Below, one piece after another: positions 3,219 to 38,313 of a DNA stretch of 64,000 nucleotides (the first letter of the stretch is position 1; each line of letters starts with the position of its first letter). Below the pieces are notes generated by a model that was not told where the DNA came from, made no database searches, and was given only the letters and a program-made list of their open reading frames with translations. This stretch comes from Anthoceros angustus. Lineage: Eukaryota; Plantae; Anthocerotophyta. The stretch lies in contig MU008161.1 of NCBI GenBank assembly GCA_010909165.1, positions 1,922,001 to 1,986,000 of the forward strand, read 5' to 3'. The translations under genes and the position numbers were made by a program.

Positions 3219-6200
3219 ATGGCGGAACTGCCTCTTCCTGCCGCGCTGGTGGAGCTGCTGGATGAGCTGGAGTCCCAGTCGCCGAGCCTGTCGGCTCTCC
3301 CTCCTCCTGCGGGTTCCACTTCATGGGGCGCCTACTTCCTGGACGGCGAACACGAAGATAGGTGGGACGTTCTTGCTCTGGAGCTGGAGGAACTGCTCAA
3401 TCAGCTCAAGTCCCAGTCGCCTGCGGGTCTCACTTCCCGGGGCACATCCTTCCTGGGCGGTCTACATGAAGATGAAGGTTGGACTGAACCGCGTGAAGAT
3501 GAAGCAAATAAACATGAAGCGAGTGTAGGTGCAGGTTCGTCTGAAGTGAGACATGATGAAGATGAAGGTCCGACCGATGAAGACGAAGGTTCGAATGAGG
3601 ATGAAGCGTGGCAAGATGAAGATGAAGGTGAGTCCATGCGGGAGGTGCGCTTGCGCATCATGACCGCTATCGGCAACTGCCGTAGCCTGAGGACCATCGA
3701 CCTGAATCCCGACGGCCATGCTGGGACGTACAGCGTGAGCGACGTGGAAGCAACGGCGCTGCTCAACAGCTTGAAGCACAACAATCCAGCGCTGGAAAGC
3801 CTGAGCCTGTCCCGGTTCAAGGGATTCGGGACGGCTGAAGCGTGCAAAGCACTCGCTGCTGGCGTCGTGCGACCCATTCGCAGCAGATTGGAAGTTCTGG
3901 ATATGCAGGGGGTTGGGCTGAGTGTGGAAGGACTGGCTCATATCTCCGCAGCCTTGCGAGGCAACAGCGCCTCACTACTCTACATGTTGCTTCTCGATGA
4001 CAACGACATGATAGGGGATGCTGCCGGGGCGCGGCACATTGCCGACATCATCACCCACTCGCCTGCACTGCGATACTTGGGGCTGATCGGGATAGGAATG
4101 GATGCTGCGGGCGCCGGGCTGATTGCAGACGCTTTGGTGCGAACCAACACACTGGACCTACTTCTTATCGGATATGACCGGCAGAAGGATCCCGAGCAGG
4201 CAGCCATGTTAACTCGTCTCGTGATTGCATTGACTGGCGATGCCTCCTCCTCGCAGTCTCACACTTCACGTGCCGCTGCTTCAGCCAACCGTTCCATCAC
4301 CAAGCTCTGGCTTGAGGTACGCGGGCTGGCAGGAGGCAATGATAGCGCTGCGGAGGCTGGGCTGAAAGAAGCTGTGGCTGCCATGCTTCTCTCCAACACC
4401 ACTTTGAAATTCCTCCATGTGACCAGCTTTTTCGTGACGCGGGGGTTGTGGGCACTGCCTCGCCACAGCAGCATCACCACACTTCAACTGCTCCACCAGC
4501 ATTCCCTGGATGAGGAGGAGCTGGATCCTCTGCTGCTGTCAATCCTGCAGGAGTGCACCAAGCTGCAGGTGCTGACACTCAGGTTCGACAAACCCTACGG
4601 GGCGAGCAACTTCACCAAGGAGTTGTTCCAGGGCTTGGAGCAAAACAAGCCTAGCGTCAAGAGGCTGGAGTTGGATGGCTGGGATGGGCTGGACGACCAC
4701 ATGTTCCAGGACCTCATTCAATCTCTGTCCACCAACACCAGCCTGGACCACATCTCCATCAGGGGCAGCTCCTGGGAAAAGCAAGGCAAAGCCGAACGTT
4801 TGGAGAAAGCGTTGAGGGATACGAGACTGAAGCTGCTTCATCCGCAGCTGCTTGCGTTGCTTGCAGAGCTGGAGTCCGAGTCCCCAGCGCTGCAAGAACT
4901 CCCATCCGAGGATGTGTGGGGGAGCTACTTCGATTGCCAATGCCAGGTCGGGGAGTGCCAACACCGCGGGGAGTGGCAGGGGGAGGTGCGCCTGCGCCTG
5001 CTCACAGCCATCGGCAGATGCCGCACACTGAGAAAGATCAATCTGAAACCTCTACGCTCGGCGGGTGACAGAAGCTTGTGGCCGGTAGAGGCGTTGGCGC
5101 TCTTATCAGGCTTGCAAGACAATCGTGTGCTGCAGAAGCTGGATTTGTGTGGCTACATGGGCTTTGGGACCACAGCAACCGGCGTGCTGCAGGCACTGGC
5201 TGCCGTCATCGAGAGATCCTACCGCTCGTTGGTGATTCTGGATTTGCAAGATATGGGATTGCGTGCAGAGGGAGTGGGTGACCTCGCTGCAGCCCTCCGA
5301 CGCAATGGCACCTCAGTCCTGTGCCACTTGGATTTCTCTGGGAATGACATCGGCAATGCTGTCGGGGCGCAACACTTGGCCCACATCCTCACCAACTTGC
5401 CCACGCTCCGCGGTCTCGGGATTAGGGAAATAGGGATGGAGGAGGAAGGCGCCGTGGTGATCGCACAGGCCCTGGCGCGCACCACCACACTCACCTGGCT
5501 TTGCATCGGACACATGGAGCCACGGAACCCAAGGCAGCCAGGGTTCACGATTCCACTGCTCGACGCTTTGGTGTGGCCTGAGTCCGACGCATCTCATGAC
5601 CTAGCGTCGGGCCCCAGCCCCATCAAGGAGGAGGAGGAGGAAGACGATCTGTATTACTATGACTTCTGGTGGGGATTGAAGAAGTGGAGTGAGCGAAGCA
5701 AGCACTTCTTCATGGATACTGCTCACTCTGCTGCTCCTATGCCTTCGTCAGGAACTCATAGCCCAGGGCGTGGTGTGACTGGCACGCCGGATCATGATGC
5801 GGCCACGAGTCTGCACCAGGCTCAAGATCCTCCTGCTGCCTTTTACAATCGCTCCATCACAGAGCTTCTTCTTTTCTGTCCGGGAGGCCAGGAGGCCGTG
5901 GAGTCGGGGTTAGGAGAAGCCCTGGCTCGCGTCCTTGGCTCTAACCGGGCTCTGAAAAAGCTTAGTGTTGCCAGCTTCTTCGTCACACGCGGATTGGGCG
6001 CTCTACGTGAAAGCAGAAGCATCACCAAACTCACAGTCACGCACACGTGGTTTGCCGACGACGACGACATGGATCCTGTTCTCATCACCATCCTTGAGGA
6101 GTGCAAGACTGTCAAGGAGCTGCAGCTTGAGTTCCACAAGCCCTTTGCTTCATCCGACTTCACCAAGCCCTTTTTCCGAGGGTTGCACAACAACCGCAGC

Positions 6201-9200
6201 ATCAAGAGGCTGGTGTTGGATGGCTGGGATGGCCTGGATGACCACATGTTTCACGACTTGATGATGTCTCTGCGAAACAACTCCAACAGCGTTCTAGAGA
6301 ACATATCCATCAAGGAAACATCATGGGAAAGCGAAGGCAAAGGGAAACACATTCAGAACGCTCTCATCAAAAACAGAAACATACGCACAAGATCAAGCCC
6401 TGGGCGGCAGGGTAAGTGGCCCAAGCTAGGTAGCTTACCGCGTCTGTTTTACTCTCTCCACTCAGAAACCACAAACACAGACCTGACAGAGCTCTTCTAT
6501 TCTCACATTCGCAGGTTCGTCAGAAGAAGTGCCACAGCAGGTCGCCGCAGGTATGAAACCACCCACTCCATGCATTCGTTCCCACTTCCAAGTAGTTGTT
6601 GGGTTGTTGCGGATGCAGCTGATGCATTCGTTCCCACTTCCAAGCAGTTCTGGCTGATGCAACTGGTTGGCAGTGTGACAATTGACTGATTTCATTGGCT
6701 GTGTGTGTGGTCACCGTAATAATACTCCAGTTCCTGTTAACGTTTGTGAGGATCCGGAGCTGCTCGCCCTGCTGGCCGAGCTCGACTCACCTTCGCCTAC
6801 ACTCCGTAGCCTTCCCGGTGTGAAAGCCTTTGGGCAGTTGTTCAAGAACGACGGTGGGCATCCAAAGGCGGAGCTGGAACTGCGCTTGCGCCTTATGACG
6901 GCTATCGGTAACTGCCCCACCCTCACATCAATCGACCTCGACTCCCTGCGAAATAACAACTCCTACCAGAGGGCGATGGCAGAGGCGACGTTGCCACTCG
7001 TCAACGGCGACGGCGCACTGGATGCTTCTCAGACGCGTGGATTTTACAGGGTGACGGCGGCAGAGGCGACGGCGCTCTTGGAAGGCCTAGCATCCAACGC
7101 AGTGTTGGAACGCCTGTACCTGACCGGGTACGATGGTTTTGGAACAGGTGAAGTCTGCCTTGCACTCGCTGCTGCCTTGCGATCCACCCGCACCTTGCGG
7201 GTTCTGGATATGAGATACACTGGCATGACTGCCGATGGACTGGGTCACATAGCTGCAGCCCTGCGACGTAAACCCCGCACAGTGCTTCGCCGATTGAGTC
7301 TCTCTGGGAATCCGAGGATAGGAGAAGGTGCTGGAGCAAAACACCTGGCTGACATCCTGACCACCACTCCCACGCTTCTCAGCCTGGGGATTCGGGATAT
7401 AGGGATGGATTATGCGGGAGCAGTGACGATAGGGACTGCCCTGGCACAGAGCCCCACTCTTTACAGGCTGAGTATAGGATATCATCACGGGTGGAGCCCG
7501 GAGCAGGCGGGGATGACGGCCACCCTGTTAGCCCGAGCACTGACCCCTGGTATGGCGGACGCAGAGCAGGAACCTCAAGGTGTTGCTGCCAAACCCCCAT
7601 CTGCTAACGGGTCGGTCACAGAACTCAGGCTACTAGTATGGGGAGCAGGAGAGCAGCCTGTCTCCCCTGCGCTGGCAGAAGCTGTGGATCGTATGCTTCG
7701 GTTCAACAGGTCTTTGAAACATCTCCACATTTCTAGCTGCTTCATAAGCCGCGGATTGGAGGGACTGAGTGACAACAGCGCTAGCAGCATCATCCGTGTG
7801 ACAGTTCGGCATGGTGGTTATAGTGATGGTGAAGATTACTGCAAACTGATGCCAATCCTACAGAGGTGCCGGAAAGTGGAAAGTTTGCACCTTAAGCAGA
7901 TGAATGTAGGATCATCTAACCTCTCGGAGACGTTTTTCAAGTCCCTGCAAAAAAATCCCCACCTGAAAGAGTTGGTACTGGATAACTGGGAAGGGCTGGA
8001 TGATGATATGTTTCAAGCACTGATGCAAGCTCTGCAAGGGAACACCAATTTGGAGAGAGTGTCGTTCGAAAACACTCTCTGGAAAAGACAGGGAAAAGGC
8101 GCTGCAGTCGATGAAGCACTACGACAAAATAAGGAATACCGACGAGCGTTAGCAGGAGTTCCGACGATGCCCGTCAAATCATGTCGCCTGGTATTGTGTG
8201 GATTTCCATATGCAGGTAAGCGGTCTAAATCCTTTTTGCTTCTGTCTTTGTCTCTGGAGCAGCATTGTTGCTAACTGATTTTCTTGCTCCTGTGTTCTTC
8301 TCCTAGGAAAAACGACCATACTAAACACCTTGATGGAAACAGAAGGAAACTATGCTGAAATCACGGGCGACACAACTTTAGAGGGAACACCTCGAACGCG
8401 AGGATTTGAGGTAAAAGTACTAAAAGAAACTACAGCATTGAGGATTACGGTTTGGGATCTTGCAGGACATAAAGAGTATCACGCCCTTCATGATCTTGTG
8501 TTTCCAAATGGAAATAATTCTTCTTTATTTATGTTTGTGTATAATCCGTTCAAGGTTGGGGACAATACAAATCCGGACTTCAAAGCTTTGAAGCACCGCA
8601 ACGATTTCAAAGCAGAGTTTATTTATTGGCTCAAGTTTATTGCTTCTAATTCGAAGGTAACGCAACAGGTTAAGCCATATATTCATGTAGTAATTACTTA
8701 TGGTGACAAGTTAGAAGGTAGTAGATATTCTATTGGAATATGCGAGCAAATGGCAGTGGTGAAGGATGAATTCAAGAATATTGTGGAGATTTCAGATGAA
8801 CCTGATCACATCCATGGGCAAAGCTGGAATGATGTGTACACCCTTAGTAAAAAAATAGAGCAAAAGGTCCAACAACTTGTTCGGCAGTTACCTCCGATCC
8901 CTAATATTTGTGAGCAGACACGTATACATGTGCAAAGATGGGCAACACAGCAACAAGGTATGCCGATCATTTCGATCGATAAGTTTATTGAGTTGTTCCT
9001 GGATACATGCAACACGGCATTACGGAGTCCACTTATCTCGCAAGATTACCGAAGATTTCTTATGGATTTCATTGAAAAAGATGATAGTTGGAAAGTAGTA
9101 GCATCATACCTCAAGGATTGTGGGGAGGTTATATATTTCCAGCAGTCGGATCTTATGGTGGTAGACCTAAAGTGGTTAGGAATGGGAGTTTTTGGTGAGC

Positions 9201-11238
9201 TGGTTAGTATATTTGGTGAACCACGACATGGAAGAGATTGGCTTCAACTTCAAAATGGGTTCATAAGCAAAGATGGATTGAGGCAACTTCTAAAAATATC
9301 TTTGGACAAGGTTGGGTTTGGTATGACCAGTGGAAGTGAGGAACAATTCATCCACTTGATGCTTGAATTACATCTTTGTTTTGAAAGTAATGTTGAAGCA
9401 GGTGAAGTGCGCTATTTTATACCCATATGTGCATATGGAGAAGGAGACATAATAGGTGTTGATCGACAATTAGCATGGCCTTCACACGGCGACAATCATG
9501 ACTATATCTTTATGGGTATGCGTTTACAATGTGATAACCAAAATTGCACTTTTTTAACGCCAGGGTTTTTCCCTCGCTTGCAGGTATAGAAGAACATTTA
9601 AGCTTGTGTTTTCTCTTAATATTTACGTGCTCGTACCTTGATCATATTATGTTTTCTTGTTCCTCACTACTTACATTATTCATTTCTTGATATCGGTGAT
9701 AGGTATTATTCCATAATTATGCATCCAAGCATAATAGTCCAATCGATTGGACAGAATTGCAAGCCAACTCCATATTTATATCTGCAGGATTTCTCGATAT
9801 CTTTGTGGAATTCAATGCTGAAATAGGTTGTCACATAGATATCTTAATCCGATCAACTGAAGGTTATTTGAGGTCTCAGTCGTTCTTGCATGAATATATC
9901 ATACCCCAGATTCGTGCATTTTGTGCCTCGTACGAGGGCTGTCCAGGGGTTACACTTGTTGAAGGTGTTCTTAGATGTGAATGTGTTGAATCCCTCACCC
10001 TATGTAGATATAGGGAAAGCCAGTGTATCCTGGCAGATGAGCTCGTCAAGAAGGTGATTGCTGAGAAAAAAAGGGGCTATGCACACTACACTCAGTCTTG
10101 GGCAGATATCTCCGACAACGCTGAAGGCAAGCCACCTATTTTAAGGGCCAACAAAGAGTATGCAAGTGTAATTGATGGTCATGTTATCTTTGGGCGAAAA
10201 GAGTACCTTGCCAAAGCTGAGGTCGAGTTCCAAGGTTCGTACATCTCATTTATGTGTGTGGATAGGCTGTTTCAGATGTCCGGGATGTGCAGATATGCAG
10301 TATAGAATTTCTCTGGAGGTTGGATATGTAACTTGTGCATGTATACTTGTGCATTCTTCCTTGCAAACTCTGAGGTTGCTCCTGTGGCAGAATGCAGATC
10401 CAACAGCAGCTTCTCGGGTGAATCCTCCACTGTACAGCTATCCCCGCAAGTGAAGGCTAAGCAGAAGGGACAACACATTCATGAAAGTTATGCTAACAAA
10501 AGCGTTGACGCAGGCAAACGGAGAGGTTTGGCAGTGATTATGAGCATGGAAGAGGACAGACCTGGAGGAGGTGTAGACAGAGGGCGACTTGAAACTCTTC
10601 TGAAGACCTTGAAGTTTGACACCGAAATTGTGGTGGACGATTCTGAGGAGATCAAAACATGTCTGAAGCAAGTTGTCAAGCTCCAACAGCTAGCTAACGA
10701 CGATTGCTTTCTGTTTTGCATTAATGGTCACGGGGGGATGGAAGAAGACGGAAGACTATACATCCTCATGAGTGGAACCGGCAAGGAGAAGCTTTATGTT
10801 GATGATGATATTTTGAAGCCCATCACTGAATGCAGGTATCTGGCCAAGAAGCCCAAGGTGTTTGTGATCAATGCTTGTCGAGGCACATGCAGCCTTGTCG
10901 CCAGCAAGAAGGCCGAGGGCGCGGACGTTGAGGGGAGCCAAGTCGTGAGCAAGAGAGCCGGAGAAGTTCGACCCCTGGATTCTGTGACCGATTGTCTGGT
11001 TGTTTTCTCCACGAGTCATGGAGACGTATCGTTCAGAGATGCCGAGAAAGGGTCAAACTTTATCACAGCTTTGGTGGACGCCATCGTCGAGGGCTCTCGA
11101 ACAGCAGCAGATCTGTTGAGCATTTTAACACGCGTGATTGACACGGTCACTCAGATGGAGGTCCGGCAAGGATCTGAGATAAGATTCCAGTGTCCTGTGG
11201 TCTACACCACACTCACCAAAAGGCTATACTGGTCTTAA
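3219..11238 (+). CDS. LRR(x3 modules)-ROC-COR (TORNADO1-like ROCO) protein with C-terminal caspase-like peptidase C14 domain; predicted exons 3219-6411, 6515-6550, 6731-8215, 8307-9583, 9703-10234, 10391-11238 (7371 nt, 2456 aa)
   Basis: All five introns are GT-AG and splice in frame. RI-like LRRs. P-loop GFPYAG|KT rebuilt across intron 3, switch RTRG, G3 WDLAGHKEYHALHDLVFP, TRN1-type COR motif FLTPGFFPRLQV|LFHN. The last exon has RPGGGVD, CINGHG, KPKVFVINACRG, SFRDAEKGSNFI and QCPVVYTTLTKRLY. Confidence 0.85.
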
Positions 11239-16187: not shown

Positions 16188-19100
16188 TCAAGGGTGCTTT
16201 CTATCTCCAACCAGAAAACTATGCACCAGTCCTTTCCTGTCTGTCCACCAGCTTTGGCCTGGCTGCTTCCAGGCTCCAATTTGCACTCTCCTAGCCTGCA
16301 TCTCCAGACCCTCCTCCCACATGTGAGCAGCGGTGTATATGTTTGCCATCAACACATATGCTGCGGCATCTTGCTCATCTAACTTCACTGCTTCATAGAA
16401 AGCACATCTTCCCACCTCCAAGTTGCTCCACGTTCCACAGGCACTAAGCAGAGTGTGCCAAACTGCAGCAGGAGGAACTACAGGCATTGCCCGTGCCAAT
16501 GCAAGTGCGGTGTCGAGTTGCCCGGCACGACCCAGGAGATCAACCATGCATGTGTAGTGCTCTGCGGCGGGAGTGATGCCGTAGTCACTGGTCATTGCAT
16601 TGAAGTACTCTTGCCCCTCATTCACTAGGCCCGAATAACTGCATGCTGTCAGTACACTGAGAAATGTGATGGAGTTTGGCTCAGTGCCATCGACTTGCAT
16701 TCTCTGAACCAAGTGAAAGACTGCTTCACAGTCTCCTTGGCAGGTGTATCCTGCAATCAGCACATTCCAGGCCACGACATCTCGTTCGGGTAATGCATCG
16801 AACACCTGGTGTGCATCGACCATGCTCCCGGCCTTTGCATACATGTTTATTAAGCTTTTGGCTACCAGGACATCCGCTTGCAGCCCTTTTTCTTCTATCT
16901 CAGCATGAAGATGCCTTCCTGGATACAATGCAGCCACATTTGCACAAGCTTGTAAGAGGCACATAAATGTCACTGCATTGGGTAGAGTGATGCCTTCATC
17001 TCGCATAGCACTGTAAAGATTCAGGGCTTCCTGGGCCATGCCCTGCTGGGAATATCCTGCTATCAGAGCGGTCCACGTCACGACATCCTTCTCACCCAGT
17101 CCGTCAAACACGCCCTGGGCATCCTCTAGGCTGCCACACTTTGCATACATGTTTACCAGGCTGCAACCTACAAACACATCAGCCTCAAGTCCTTGTTCTC
17201 GAATTTGTGCATGAAGCTGCTTCCCTTCCTGCAAAGCTGGGGTACCCACACCCGCACATGCTTGCAGAAGGCACACAAATGTCATGGAATTGGGTGGAGC
17301 GATGCCTTCTTCTCGCATAGCACTGTAAAGATGAAGGGCTTGCTGGCCCAGATCCTGCTGGGAATATCCTGTTATCAGAGCGGTCCATGTCACAACATTC
17401 TTTTGGCCAATTCTGTCAAACACGTCTTGGGCATCCTCAAGGCTGCCACACTTTGCATACATGTTTACCAGGCTGCAACCTACCACCGCATCAGCATCAA
17501 GTCCTCGTTCTCCAATCTGTGCATGAAGCTGCTTCCCCATCTGCAAAGCCACGGTACCCACACATGCACAAGCCTGCAGGAGGGACACAAATGTTACAGA
17601 ATCGGGTGCAACAATGCCCTCTTCTACCATAGAACTGTAAACACCAAGGGCTTCTTGGCCCATGCCTTGCTGAGAGTATGCTGCTATCATGGCATTCCAT
17701 GTCACCACAGCTTTCTGAGGCAGTCCATCAAACACGAACTGAGCATCCTCTGTGCTGCCACACTTTGCATACATGTTTACCAGACTGCAACCTAAGAATA
17801 CATCAACTTGAAGTCCTCGCTCTCCAATCTGAGCATGAAGCTGCTTTCCCTTCGCCAAAGCTGGGCCACCTACACTCGCACATGCCTGCAAGAGGCAAAC
17901 AATTGTTGCGGGATTGGGTGGAGCAACGCCTTCTTCTTGCATTGAACTGTAAAGACAAAGTGCTTCCTGACCCATGCCCTGCTGGGAATATCCTGCTATC
18001 AGAGCCGTCCACGCCACCACAGATTTTTCATCAAGCCTGTCAAATACTTCCTGTGCATCCTGAAGACTGCCACACCGTACATACATGTTCACCAGACTGC
18101 CACCTACCATCATATCAGCCTGTAATCCATGCTCAGCTTCAATCTGTGCATGAAGCTGCTTCCCCTTCTCCAAAGCCAGTGCACCCATACTTGCACATGC
18201 TTGCAGAAGACACACAAATGTCACAGAATTGGGTGTAGTGATGCACTCTGCTCGCATTGCACTGTAAAGATGAATAGCTTCCTGGGCCATGCCCTGCTGC
18301 GAATATCCTGTTATCAAAGCAGTCCAAGTGACAACATCTTTTCGATCAAGGCTGTTGAACACTCTCCTTGCATCCTCTAGGCTGCCACACTTTGAATACA
18401 TATTGACCAGGCTGCAACCTACAAACACATCAGCCTGAAGCCCTTGCTTTCCAATCTTTGCATGAAGCTCCTTCCCCTTCTCCAAAGCCTGCATACCCAC
18501 ACTTGAGCATGCTTGCAGGAGGGAAACAAAAGTCACAGAATCAGGTACACTGATGCCTTCTTCTTGCATAGCACTGTAAAGACGAAGGGCCTCCTGACCC
18601 ATACCCTGCTGGGAGTAGCCTGCTATCATGGCATTCCATGTCACCACATCCTTTCTGCCAAGTCCATCAAACACTCTTTGACCGTGTTCCAAGTTCCCGC
18701 ACTTTGCATACATGTCTACCAAGCAGTTAGACACAAACAAATCAGGCTCAACCCCACTAGCCAACACGTCAGCATGCACCTGCTGCCCAGTCTTCACGTC
18801 TGCTCCCCTTGCGCAAGCCTGTAGGGCTGCTACAAACACATGGCCATCTGGCTTCACATTTGACCTCCGCATCTCTCGATACAGCTCTATGGCCTGACCA
18901 GCTCGCCCGTGTTTAACATGGGCAGAAATTATGGACGACCACATGAAGGCATCTGGTTTGCCAACCACGGTGAACACATCCATCGCTTCTTGTAACCTGC
19001 CATGAGAAGTATACATCCGCATGATGTGGTTGCACAAGAACGTGTCCGACTCACACCCATTCTCCAGTGCGAGGGCATGAACCCGGCGACCCATCACCAG

Positions 19101-19391
19101 ATCCCTTTTCACAACACATTGCTTGAGGACTGTGTACATGAGAGAAACAGAAACACAGCAGTATGCCTGAACCAAAATTCCCAGAGCCTCCACAGCCTCA
19201 GTGAGCTGCCCCTGCCCCTGCTGGCAAAGTCTGCTCACGGTCTCAGCCGTTGGGAAGTTAAATGTAAAGGCACCACGACCCATCTGCATATCCAGAGCAG
19301 TTACACATCCACGCAAGCTCGATTCTTGAAGCTGAGGACCTGGTGGGCCTTCCTCAGCTGGAAGGCAGGGCACCTCCCCACCAAAGCGCAT
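16188..19391 (-). CDS. PLS-class PPR protein ending in a WW-type PG box/partial E+ (no DYW); possibly a young pseudogene
   Basis: 1067-aa intronless ORF of highly similar PLS triplets ending KQPGQSWWTDRKGLVHSFLVGDRKHP*. In-frame TGA stops lie at both ends with coding-like sequence beyond them. Confidence 0.88.
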   Translation of the reverse strand: MRFGGEVPCLPAEEGPPGPQLQESSLRGCVTALDMQMGRGAFTFNFPTAETVSRLCQQGQGQLTEAVEALGILVQAYCCVSVSLMYTVLKQCVVKRDLVMGRRVHALALENGCESDTFLCNHIMRMYTSHGRLQEAMDVFTVVGKPDAFMWSSIISAHVKHGRAGQAIELYREMRRSNVKPDGHVFVAALQACARGADVKTGQQVHADVLASGVEPDLFVSNCLVDMYAKCGNLEHGQRVFDGLGRKDVVTWNAMIAGYSQQGMGQEALRLYSAMQEEGISVPDSVTFVSLLQACSSVGMQALEKGKELHAKIGKQGLQADVFVGCSLVNMYSKCGSLEDARRVFNSLDRKDVVTWTALITGYSQQGMAQEAIHLYSAMRAECITTPNSVTFVCLLQACASMGALALEKGKQLHAQIEAEHGLQADMMVGGSLVNMYVRCGSLQDAQEVFDRLDEKSVVAWTALIAGYSQQGMGQEALCLYSSMQEEGVAPPNPATIVCLLQACASVGGPALAKGKQLHAQIGERGLQVDVFLGCSLVNMYAKCGSTEDAQFVFDGLPQKAVVTWNAMIAAYSQQGMGQEALGVYSSMVEEGIVAPDSVTFVSLLQACACVGTVALQMGKQLHAQIGERGLDADAVVGCSLVNMYAKCGSLEDAQDVFDRIGQKNVVTWTALITGYSQQDLGQQALHLYSAMREEGIAPPNSMTFVCLLQACAGVGTPALQEGKQLHAQIREQGLEADVFVGCSLVNMYAKCGSLEDAQGVFDGLGEKDVVTWTALIAGYSQQGMAQEALNLYSAMRDEGITLPNAVTFMCLLQACANVAALYPGRHLHAEIEEKGLQADVLVAKSLINMYAKAGSMVDAHQVFDALPERDVVAWNVLIAGYTCQGDCEAVFHLVQRMQVDGTEPNSITFLSVLTACSYSGLVNEGQEYFNAMTSDYGITPAAEHYTCMVDLLGRAGQLDTALALARAMPVVPPAAVWHTLLSACGTWSNLEVGRCAFYEAVKLDEQDAAAYVLMANIYTAAHMWEEGLEMQARRVQIGAWKQPGQSWWTDRKGLVHSFLVGDRKHP

Positions 19392-35063: not shown

Positions 35064-36235
35064 ATGGCCAGGTCCCGCTCCCGCTCTCCCAGCCGAGGTA
35101 CGGTTTGTACTGTTTTCTTGTTGCTCCTTCTTACCTTGAAATTGCAAGCTGAGCTAGGTAGTTTGCTAGCTAGCTTAGCTTGTGTTTGTGTCTGTTTGTG
35201 GCGGTGTCCACACTGACTGACCTAGTCTTGCTCCTGTCTGTGTCTCCTCTGGTTTGCAGCTGACAGAGGCAAGGAACGCGAGAGAGTGAGCATCCGGGAT
35301 CGTGAACGGGAACGGGAACGGGACAGGGACAGGGCGCGGGAGCGGGACAGAGACAGAGGCCGTGACGGCAGGGATCGGCGCGGAGACAGGGAGAGGGATA
35401 GGGATAGAGACAGGGAGCGGGAAAGGGAGAGGGAACGGGACAGGGGAAGGGACAGGAGGAGAGCCCGGTCTCCAGAGAGGTCACCAGGGGATCGCCATGG
35501 CCGAGCTCGGTCGCCCCGACGGGACAGAGCCAGGGAGCGAAGCAAGGAGAGGAGCAGGGAGCGGGAGCATGACAAGGGTGATGGCGGAAACTCGGGAAAG
35601 CACCGGGAGCGGAAAGATGAAGACGGGCAGGCGGCTATGGTGGCGGAGTTCGTGGACGAGATAGCGAGAGGGCAGAAGGAACCGGTCGGAGGGACGGACG
35701 CTCAGGCTGAGGCTCAAGCTCTGGCTCTGGCTCAAGCCCAGGCAAACGAGGAGGAGATGATGAAGAAGTTCGGGATTCCCGTCGGGTTCAGTACTACCAA
35801 GGTATGCAGTGGGTCTCATTTCGTCTCGGTGCTGTTTACTCTAGCTTGCATTTGTGTGTGCAGTAGCGTTGCAGGCTGGATTTTGTTGGAGAAGCTGGAT
35901 TTTCGGTGCTGCTTGTGTGCAAGGATGGATTGGTGATCTTGGGGTTTTGTTAGTCAATGCTGGCAGTAACGGGAGCTGTGTGATGGATGTCCTGTAGGGC
36001 AAGTATGTGCCAGATGCAAATCACTCTGCTGTCAAGCTCACGACAAAGCGGACACCGAGGCAGTATATGAACAGGAGAGGTTTGTATAGCAACCACCTAC
36101 CGTCTTTGAAAGTGGTTCGTGTTGTTGTTGTGTTCGGATTTTATGGCTCTCATGTCGTGCCTTGTTAATGCGTTGGCTCGTTTTGTTGTTGCAGGTGGTT
36201 TCAATCGTCCTCTGCCTGCTGAGACAAATCGCTGA
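35064..36235 (+). CDS. SNRNP27: U4/U6.U5 tri-snRNP 27 kDa protein, 4 exons
   Basis: N-terminus rich in RS/RD/RE. C-terminal EEEMMKKFGIPVGFSTTK|GKYVPDANHSAVKLTTKRTPRQYMNRR|GGFNRPLPAETNR*. Confidence 0.92.
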
Positions 36236-37185
36236 TGGCTGCAATTTGTTTTTCGTCTGGCGAGCTATTGTGTACAAGTCGGCAATGCACAGAGCACAGG
36301 TTTGGATAATTTTCAGCGTTTGTTTTATTTCTCAGGAGTCAGCATGTTAAAATTATCTTCCTACGTCATTTGCTTTTGCTAATGTACGAGTCCGTTTTGT
36401 TTTTCAGGGTGATGCCTTTGATGGCTGGCTGCAAAAGAGAGACCAGCTTCAGAAAGCGTAGAAGTAGAGCGTAGAAGTAGTTTCGTAAATGTCAGGTACA
36501 ATTTGTTTAAGTTGGTAGCTCCCACTCTGGGTTCCGCTGCCCTGCAGTCGGATCTGGGTTGGAATTTTGGCCGGCAGCTTCCAGAACTGCTTTTTTCCTG
36601 CATCGCACAGCTATGACGTTGGCAACATCCTCAAGCAGCAGCTTTGGCAAACTTAAGGTGTTCCAAGACTCGTAAGGGTCGCTGTTACAGGACACCCGTA
36701 TTCAGTCACATGGCGCATCCTCGCTCGGGTTCCAGGTCCAAAGTCCAGGGCTATCGGTAAATGTAGCGCCGATCTCCACATGGCCAAGAAGCATCCACGT
36801 TCCAGCCCATAACGTCTTTCACAAATTGTGTAGTTCTGCGCAAACAGTTCAGGCATTGTCGAAATCAGACATGTTGCATTGTTGAAAAGAAGGAGTCCAG
36901 TATTTTGTATTAGCGGACAAACAACGAGGCATTATAAAATATATATCAGAAATTGCACCAATGCGAGGTGAGACGGTGAGACCGGGGGCAGAGCTTTCCC
37001 GCAAGGCTGCAGGGAGGGCAGAGAAGATCGCAAGAACGAGAATAGCATACCAATGCGGGCAAAAATGCTCAAAGGCGTTTCTCGGCATTCGACGTAGTCG
37101 CTCAGGCCGCGGCTCATCAGGTCGCCGCTCAGGCCGTTGCGTGCCTGAGGTGGAGGTAGCGATTTGCCCGCCTCTGATAGCCGCG

Positions 37186-38313
37186 GACATGAGAACAGGA
37201 GAGTCCGGTCCCCAGACAGGTCACCAGAAGATCGCCATGGCCGAGCTCAGACTCCCCGGCGGGACAGAGCCAGGGAACGAAGCAGCGGGAGCAGGAGCAT
37301 AGCTAGGGTGATGGCGGGAACCCGGGGAAGGAGCAGGTTGCAAGGGCTCTCAGGCTCAGGCTCAAGCTCAGGCTAAAGCTCAAGCCCAGGCGAATGAGGA
37401 GGAGACGATGAAGTTCAGGGTTCGAGTGTCGGATTCAATACTACCTAGGTACGCAGTCGGCCTCATTTCTTCCCTGTGCTGCTTATTCCATCTTGCATTT
37501 GCGTGTGCGGTACAGTTGCAGTTTGTTGGAGGAGCTGGATTTTCGGTGCTGCTTGTGTGGAAGGATGGATGATGAATTTAGGGTTTTGTTCGTCAATGCT
37601 GGTCTTCACGGGAGCTGTGTCATGGATGTTCTGTAGGACAAGTATGTGGCAGACGAGAATCACTCTGCAGTCAAGCTCCCGACAACGTGGATACCGAGGC
37701 AGTATATATGAACTGGAGAGGTTTGTATAGCAACCACCTGCCATCTCAGAACTTGGGTTCGTGTTGTTTTTGTTATAAGATTTTAGGGCTCTTACATCCT
37801 GCCATTTTAATGCGTTGGTTCGTTTTGTTGACATAAATAATAATGTTGTTGTTGTTGCTGTTTCAGGTGGTTTCAATCGTCCTCTGCCTGCTGATACAAG
37901 TCATTGATGGCTGCAATTTTATTTTATGGTTACAAGTCGGGAATGCACAGGCAGCACAGGTTTGGATCATTTTCCAAGTTTGTTTTGCTTCTGAGGAGTC
38001 AGCATGTTAAAGTATCTTCTTATGTCGCTTGCTCTTTGCTAATACACGGATCCGTTTTAATTTTCAGGGCGTACCTTAGGTGGGTGACTGCAGGAGAAGA
38101 CCAGCTCCAAGATATCGTGGAAGTAGTTTCATAAATTTAGGTACAATTATTTACGTTTACAGCTCCAACTCTGGGGTCAGCTGCTCTGCAGTCGGATCTG
38201 GGTTCGAAAGTTTTGCTGGCAGCTTCCGGATCTTCCTTTTCCCTGCATGGGTCGCCACGCCGCTATGACGTTGGCAATATCCTCAAGCATCTTTGGCAGA
38301 TTTGGCAAACTTG
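37186..38313 (+). pseudogene. Partial tandem duplicate of SNRNP27 (3' half, introns and 3' flank), disrupted
   Basis: Colinear similarity to ~35451-36654 including intron sequence. Deletions and frameshifts, e.g. aggcagtatatatgaactggagag versus aggcagtatatgaacaggagag. The 5' exon is missing. Confidence 0.88.

What the first reader, a model, noticed from the sequence alone, without database searches (positions are those of the whole stretch)
3219..11238. A single plant gene fusing LRR sensor modules, a TORNADO1-like ROC-COR GTPase and a caspase: candidate self-contained immune/cell-death receptor
Seen: what the ORF track shows as five separate ORFs splices into one frame through five canonical GT-AG introns (6412-6514, 6551-6730, 8216-8306, 9584-9702, 10235-10390). 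The result is 7371 nt, or 2456 aa, with no internal stop. Intron 3 rebuilds the P-loop GFPYAGKT, and intron 5 joins the COR exon to the protease exon (CAA G|AA TGC). Established: ROCO proteins (LRRK2, bacterial Rocos, plant TRN1) dimerise through COR under nucleotide control, and initiator caspases are activated by induced dimerisation. Inference: the LRRs sense a ligand, ROC-COR acts as the switch and the caspase is activated in cis, an NLR/apoptosome-like logic built on a GTPase. I know of no described land-plant protein with this architecture.
Basis: partly seen in the sequence, partly recalled or inferred. Interest (0 to 1): 0.95.

Follow-up and report, generated by a model that had tools for sequence, protein, structure and literature searches.

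The report
Plant sensor-GTPase gene ending in caspase
This plant has an intact, spliced and transcribed gene that joins leucine-rich sensor repeats and a GTP-driven switch to an animal-type caspase protease, an enzyme class plants are said to lack; it is probably an immune or cell-death receptor, but its activity is untested.

Summary
Confirmed. Six exons (3219-11238) splice through five GT-AG introns into one stop-free frame of 2456 codons. Contigs of a public run (probably RNA) skip all five introns exactly; one error-free contig runs from Roc-COR through the 10234|10391 joint into the protease. The protein is three ribonuclease-inhibitor-like LRR modules, a TORNADO1-family Roc-COR (two intron positions shared with TRN1-like genes) and a C14 domain that folds like animal caspases (Z 31 caspase-8; metacaspase 19), with the His-Cys dyad and both Asp-binding arginines. 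This caspase belongs to a bryophyte clade also found on COR (Nothoceros, other contigs), on NLRs (Ceratodon) and on hydrolases (Marchantia), which supports an immune role. Corrections: the layout is not new to life, since LRR-Roc-COR-caspase is listed among predicted bacterial counter-invader proteins (Kaur 2021); and the model Roco dimerises in the GDP state, not on GTP. I found no plant description in 10 full-text searches. The scan has noted this family many times elsewhere in this genome, often as broken copies; this copy is intact. Protease activity, ligand, substrate and cell death are untested.

The parts
3219..11238 (+). whole gene, six coding exons, 2456 codons: LRR x3 - Roc - COR - caspase
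3219..6411 (+). exon 1: LRR module 1 (about 3219-4862, with an acidic insert and partly doubled N-cap) and LRR module 2 (about 4863-6386, with a low-complexity insert)
   Evidence: modules about 41% identical, 28-30 aa RI-type spacing; reads cover 5400 onward
6412..6514 (+). intron 1, 103 nt, GT-AG
6515..6550 (+). exon 2, 36-nt micro-exon (linker)
   Evidence: both flanking joints in one contig
6551..6730 (+). intron 2, 180 nt, GT-AG
6731..8215 (+). exon 3: LRR module 3 (about 6745-8142) and first strand plus most of the P-loop of Roc (G at 8200)
   Evidence: similar to LRR exons of TRN1-like loci L013/L014, E 1e-23 to 1e-25
8216..8306 (+). intron 3, 91 nt, splits the P-loop Gly; same position in TRN1-like locus L009 and in L002
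8307..9583 (+). exon 4: Roc (P-loop Lys 8309, G2 Thr 8396, G3 WDLAG Asp 8456, G4 TYGD 8696), COR-A (about 9071-9424), start of COR-B
9584..9702 (+). intron 4, 119 nt, after FFPRLQ; same position in TRN1-like genes, L001 and L002
9703..10234 (+). exon 5: rest of COR (homologous to TORNADO1, E 9e-19) and linker
10235..10390 (+). intron 5, 156 nt, joins COR exon to protease exon
   Evidence: 255 letters on the shorter side
10391..11238 (+). exon 6: caspase-type C14 domain (about 10525-11229); Arg179-equivalent 10558, catalytic His 10729, Asn in place of Gln283 10870, catalytic Cys 10876, linker Asp 10924, Arg341-equivalent 11035; stop 11236-11238
8411..8554 (+). possible minor in-frame exitron (144 nt) that would delete 48 aa including G3
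   Evidence: (one low-depth contig, 26 letters on the short side: weak)

Best explanation
An intact member of an expanded, TORNADO1-derived Roco family in a bryophyte (most likely a hornwort; inference) in which the N-terminal LRR domain has been triplicated and the TRN1 C-terminal tail replaced by an animal-type caspase domain. Shown: one spliced transcript, domain order, intact GTPase motifs, intact caspase dyad and S1 arginines, caspase fold. Inferred: it is a cytosolic receptor-protease. The LRR modules bind a microbial or damage-related ligand and release autoinhibition; the Roc-COR unit runs a nucleotide-dependent monomer-dimer cycle; COR dimerisation (by analogy with CtRoco, in the GDP/empty state after hydrolysis) brings two C-terminal caspase domains together, as induced proximity does for initiator caspases; the protease then cuts after Asp, possibly itself at the linker Asp, and a downstream death or defence effector.
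For: Splicing and fusion. COR and caspase in a single exon in two loci of another genome and in a Nothoceros transcript. Roc-COR: TRN1 relatives at E 1e-42, fold hits MbRoco2, LRRK1/2, CtRoco, shared introns. Caspase: pLDDT 92 model, Z 30.9 caspase-8, 29.6 caspase-9, MALT1 22.7, metacaspase 19.1; R179/H237/C285/R341 equivalents kept. Same clade (18 rows, support 100; 13 rows, 99) holds caspases at the N-terminus of Ceratodon NB-ARC-LRR proteins. Bacterial LRR-Roc-COR-effector systems with caspase. Close paralogous transcripts at 90-95%.
Against: No biochemical or genetic data. Gln283 is Asn and Trp348 is Asn, so specificity or activity may differ. The linker Asp is not conserved in the clade and some members have lost the dyad (P0006, P0021, P0023). 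Roc and COR Pfam scores are below threshold; G4 is TYGD, not THxD; L002 has a degenerate P-loop yet an intact caspase, so GTP control may be dispensable. No substrate gene recognised in this window. TRN1 itself acts in development.
Confidence: 0.55

Rival explanations
1. A non-lethal signalling or developmental protease: same receptor-switch-protease logic, but acting like TRN1 in patterning or in processing a regulator, not in immunity.
For: The Roc-COR and LRR derive from TORNADO1, known only from leaf patterning; many animal caspases have non-death roles (own knowledge); the copy is constitutively represented in a public run.
Against: Family expansion with close paralogues and use of the same caspase on NLRs are typical of immune genes; the window's Roc-COR lies on a long branch outside the conserved angiosperm TRN1 clade.
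Confidence: 0.2
2. The protease is real but not gated by Roc-COR dimerisation, or not Asp-specific: it is a zymogen released by cleavage, or a low-activity scaffold or decoy with altered S1 pocket.
For: Gln283 to Asn across the clade, Trp348 lost, dyad lost in 3 of 15 relatives, degenerate P-loop in L002; the same caspase works on three different scaffolds.
Against: Both S1 arginines and the dyad are kept here and in most of the clade over great divergence (30-40% identity); all scaffolds it is fused to (COR, NB-ARC) are oligomerisers except the hydrolase; the six-stranded caspase fold favours dimer activation.
Confidence: 0.2
3. Artefact: chimeric assembly, animal contaminant, or read-through of two separate genes.
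For: No single contig spans the whole gene; only one run, of guessed RNA type, possibly from the source organism. Nearest non-plant caspases are animal.
Against: Exact spliced joints with no mismatches; fusion in one exon in L001/L002 and in a Nothoceros transcript; clade members on Marchantia, Riccia and Ceratodon chromosomes; plant PLS-DYW PPR neighbours.
Confidence: 0.03

Closest known systems
Bacterial AP-GTPase (Roco) counter-invader proteins, LRR-Roc-COR-effector with caspase among at least 24 effectors (Kaur et al. 2021, PMC8195603)
   Same: Same domain order and same proposed logic; multiple paralogues per genome.
   Different: Predicted only; bacterial. Here the Roc-COR is TRN1-type with plant intron positions and the protease is closest to animal caspases (bacterial EACC1 caspase HMM scores only 29 bits, cut-off 140; no bacterial relative found in genome contigs), so an independent fusion is likelier than transfer of the whole gene.
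Plant TORNADO1 (LRR-Roc-COR)
   Same: RI-like LRR, Roc-COR 27-32% identical over 400 aa, two shared intron positions.
   Different: LRR domain triplicated; C-terminal tail replaced by a caspase; long branch outside the conserved angiosperm TRN1 clade; multi-copy family.
Animal initiator caspases (caspase-8/-9; MEROPS C14A) with apoptosome or inflammasome activation
   Same: Fold, His-Cys dyad, Arg179/Arg341 S1 pocket, KPK-F-xACRG motif, flexible intersubunit linker.
   Different: No DED/CARD; sensor and dimeriser are in cis; Gln283 to Asn, Trp348 to Asn; forms its own long-branched plant clade; orthology not established.
Plant metacaspases (C14B) and paracaspase MALT1
   Same: Clan CD fold and dyad.
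   Different: Much lower structural score (Z 19 and 23 against 31); basic rather than acidic S1 residues.
Brown algal and other SAR Rocos with C-terminal peptidase (PMC11378527); LRRK2/DAPK1
   Same: LRR-Roc-COR with a C-terminal enzyme; proposed immune receptors in brown algae.
   Different: Effector is a trypsin-like peptidase or kinase, not a caspase.

Membership tests
Roco proteins | Roc GTPase with G1-G4 motifs | tested here: met
   GFPYAGKT, TRG, WDLAG, TYGD; Pfam Roc 1e-4, below gathering; TIGR00231 8e-5
Roco proteins | COR domain directly after Roc | tested here: met
   COR-A 9e-6; fold hits are RocCOR structures (low TM about 0.3 because the exon lacks the P-loop strand and most of COR-B); exon 5 matches TRN1 COR
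Roco proteins | GTP hydrolysis and nucleotide-dependent dimer cycle | not testable with these tools
   needs biochemistry
TORNADO1 family (homology) | RI-like LRR plus TRN1-type Roc-COR, shared introns | tested here: met
TORNADO1 orthologue | Groups within the conserved TRN1 clade and has the TRN1 C-terminal tail | tested here: not met
   outside the angiosperm TRN1 clade on a long branch; tail replaced by caspase
Caspases (C14A) | Caspase fold rather than metacaspase/paracaspase fold | tested here: met
Caspases (C14A) | His-Cys dyad | tested here: met
Caspases (C14A) | S1 pocket Arg179, Gln283, Arg341 | tested here: inconclusive
   both Arg kept; Gln is Asn, as in 6 of 85 non-plant hits
Caspases (C14A) | Cleavage after Asp; activation by dimerisation | not testable with these tools
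   needs assay
Caspases (C14A) | Nested within or orthologous to animal caspases | tested here: inconclusive
   plant clade is separate and long-branched; tree unrooted and holds no bacterial or metacaspase outgroup
Plant metacaspases (C14B) | Acidic S1 pocket and metacaspase fold | tested here: not met
NLR receptors | STAND ATPase (NB-ARC/NACHT) | tested here: not met
   no such domain; it may work like an NLR but is not one
Bacterial AP-GTPase counter-invader systems | Common descent of the fused gene | tested here: inconclusive
   no bacterial relative of the caspase exon, but these searches see close relatives only; bacterial Roco-caspases were not in the tree

The most novel reading that the evidence does not exclude
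Bryophytes kept a true Asp-specific caspase lineage and use it as the executioner of immune receptors: on a Roco GTPase in hornworts (a one-gene GTPase-gated inflammasome), on NLRs in mosses and on hydrolases in liverworts, with a pore-former such as the gasdermin noted elsewhere in this genome as a possible substrate. This would be a caspase-driven death pathway in land plants.
Probability: 0.35. Interest if true: 0.95.

Novelty: new variant of a known kind. Interest (0 to 1): 0.86.

Why it matters
A 2026 review still states that no true caspase exists in plants (PMC13272413), and surveys of NLR N-terminal domains in non-flowering plants list no caspase class (PMC10952240, PMC11218826). An intact, transcribed gene gives a direct reagent to test whether land plants have an Asp-specific caspase and a caspase-based death pathway. 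It also gives a natural reporter of Roc-COR dimer state: a dimer-activated protease on COR could settle which nucleotide state is 'on' for Roco proteins such as LRRK2, and hints at what the orphan TRN1 family does.

Tried and rejected
As the operators asked, all database searches and folds were done exon by exon by reference; the joined protein was not searched or folded, so domain packing and full-length relatives were not tested directly. Word-indexed homologue search with the caspase exon gave nothing; the exhaustive HMMER search did. PDB sequence search with exon 4 gave nothing; the fold search did. Metagenome scan returned only short, weak caspase hits with no Roc-COR; the genome-contig scan found no relative. 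Source runs of L001-L005 could not be named. The Pfam T3SS_LEE hit on exon 5 (E 0.04) and the faint LRR hits on exon 1 were treated as noise or uninformative. One careful tree was killed by the sandbox; trees are quick or FastTree only. The TRN1 paper was not held. Rejected: five separate ORFs (reads), metacaspase (fold, S1 residues), TRN1 orthologue (tree, tail), animal contaminant (plant neighbours, plant chromosomes), pseudogene (no lesion, spliced). No gasdermin was recognised among long ORFs of this window by eye (not a profile search).

Full report
Observation. All five introns are GT-AG, phases agree, and the coding length is 7371 nt with one terminal stop; retention of any intron breaks the frame. 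The start ATG at 3219 sits at the beginning of a repeat module, since modules 2 and 3 begin with the same cap motif. One public run holds the region (RNA by guess, possibly the source organism). Its contigs skip all five introns at the predicted bases. Exons 1-2-3 are linked in one contig, exons 3-4 in a second, and exons 4-5-6 in a third of 2136 nt with no mismatch, which covers the critical 10234|10391 joint with 255 letters on the short side. Depth rises smoothly from 28 to 61 along the gene.

Host. Neighbours are PLS-DYW PPR genes, an RWP-RK gene and a methylmalonyl-CoA mutase exon. The nearest caspase rows by tree path are Nothoceros aenigmaticus transcripts. A hornwort is the likeliest source; this is inference.

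Sensor part. Exons 1 and 3 hold three copies of a module of about 400-500 aa, about 41% identical, each with an N-cap, about 11-12 repeats at 28-30 aa spacing and a C-cap. Atlas neighbours are RI/tropomodulin-type LRR clusters, and module 3 matches the single LRR exon of TRN1-like loci (E 1e-23 to 1e-25). So the whole TRN1 LRR domain was triplicated.

Switch part. Exon 4 finds 29 proteins, the named ones TORNADO1, at 27-32% over most of its length. G1 to G4 are present. Its model (pLDDT 69) matches Methanosarcina Roco2, LRRK1/2 and Chlorobium Roco first. Introns 3 and 4 lie at the same residues in a caspase-less TRN1-like locus (L009) and in L001/L002. The window's copy lies on a long branch outside the angiosperm TRN1 clade, and the TRN1 tail is absent: a derived paralogue, not the orthologue.

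Protease part. Exon 6 is Peptidase_C14 (5e-32); PDB sequence hits are caspase-8, -7, -3. The model (pLDDT 92) aligns to caspase-8 at Z 30.9, caspase-9 29.6, MALT1 22.7 and Arabidopsis metacaspase 4 at 19.1. The alignment used for folding was mostly animal caspases, which may bias the model, but the sequence motifs say the same: dyad His and Cys, and both arginines that bind P1 Asp are kept; Gln283 is Asn and Trp348 is Asn. The predicted flexible linker holds an Asp at 10924, not conserved in relatives.

Relatives. An exhaustive search puts a small set of sequences above the animal caspases; they form one group with the window's domain (support 99-100). It occurs on three scaffolds. On COR: L001 and L002, where the COR end and the caspase share one exon, and a Nothoceros transcript. 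On NLRs: Ceratodon purpureus KC19_5G008800 (caspase-NB-ARC-LRR) and KC19_5G008700 (with a hydrolase-like segment in related loci), and moss-like contigs L003, L007, L011. On alpha/beta-hydrolases or alone: Marchantia and Riccia. Thus all three bryophyte lineages carry it, which excludes contamination and places it in the effector slot of NLRs. Reads also show close paralogues at 90-95% identity with higher depth than this copy.

Mechanism. Shown: transcript, domain order, intact motifs, fold. From established knowledge: initiator caspases are activated by dimerisation (own knowledge); Roco proteins dimerise through COR (PMC6337361), and CtRoco is dimeric when empty or GDP-bound and monomeric on GTP (PMC5714945). 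Inferred: ligand binding to the LRRs shifts the cycle to the COR dimer, which pairs the caspases. I put an immune or death receptor-protease at 0.55, a non-lethal developmental protease at 0.2, a protease not gated by Roc-COR or of other specificity at 0.2, and artefact at 0.03.

Comparison. LRR-Roc-COR with caspase as one of at least 24 C-terminal effectors is described in silico for bacteria (PMC8195603), a lead I took from note s1-291237 and checked. Brown algal Rocos with a trypsin-like peptidase are also known (PMC11378527). No paper in ten full-text searches described a plant Roco-caspase, a plant caspase-NLR class or a bryophyte caspase; subscription papers are not covered, and databases already auto-annotate some members as 'caspase family p20 domain'. 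A 2026 review says plants have no true caspase. Because the Roc-COR is TRN1-type with plant introns and the protease resembles animal more than bacterial caspases, the fusion is more likely convergent with the bacterial one; the origin of the plant caspase clade is unresolved.

Verdict. A real, intact, expressed gene; a new variant of a kind predicted in bacteria, undescribed in plants as far as I could search. The scan noted this family many times elsewhere in this genome, often broken and sometimes beside gasdermin genes (unchecked AI notes). This copy is the one suited to testing. Interest 0.86.

Noticed in passing
L007:1855-5564; L003:591-6749; L011:744-5841; P0194, P0199: Moss caspase-NB-ARC-LRR and caspase-hydrolase-NB-ARC-LRR genes in tandem (Ceratodon KC19_5G008800/008700); caspase exon joins the NB-ARC exon in frame. 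Not listed as an NLR class in the surveys read. Some copies have lost the dyad.
   Followed up: partly
P0008, P0026, P0038, P0151-P0156: Marchantia alpha/beta-hydrolase-caspase fusions (Mp6g00860, Mp6g00900 cluster) and a Riccia protein with the same caspase clade.
   Followed up: partly
L006:10001-18614: Caspase of this clade followed by multi-exon NB-ARC and LRR pieces on a 164 kb contig of an unnamed organism.
   Followed up: no
L002:495-760: A Roco-caspase relative with a degenerate P-loop but an intact caspase dyad.
   Followed up: partly
window:8411-8554: Possible in-frame exitron removing the G3 motif of Roc; one low-depth contig only.
   Followed up: partly
window:10415-10700: Reads from close paralogues with several-fold higher depth, other letters at 10540-10562 and different sequence upstream of about 10690.
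   Followed up: no
window:7269-7569: One contig joins these places on opposite strands; probably an artefact or paralogue.
   Followed up: no
P0148, P0014: Caspase-like proteins from the green alga Mantoniella antarctica and an unnamed eukaryote lie near, but outside, the plant clade; relevant to its origin.
   Followed up: no
window:12174-14708 (+) and 16188-19391 (-): Two PLS-type PPR genes; the first ends in E and DYW domains.
   Followed up: partly
window:25667-26221: Methylmalonyl-CoA mutase exon (B12-dependent enzyme, unusual for land plants).
   Followed up: partly
window:53700-55016: RWP-RK transcription factor exon.
   Followed up: partly
window:45536-47612: Tandem duplication of about 1040 nt at 95% identity in an AT-rich region.
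   Followed up: no
window:35701-38312: Two copies of about 1 kb at 77% identity (35701-36654, 37349-38312).
   Followed up: no
window:48700-49610: Degenerate simple-repeat array with strong strand skew.
   Followed up: no
window:59377-60732 (-): Exons resembling a NIP-type aquaporin by eye.
   Followed up: no
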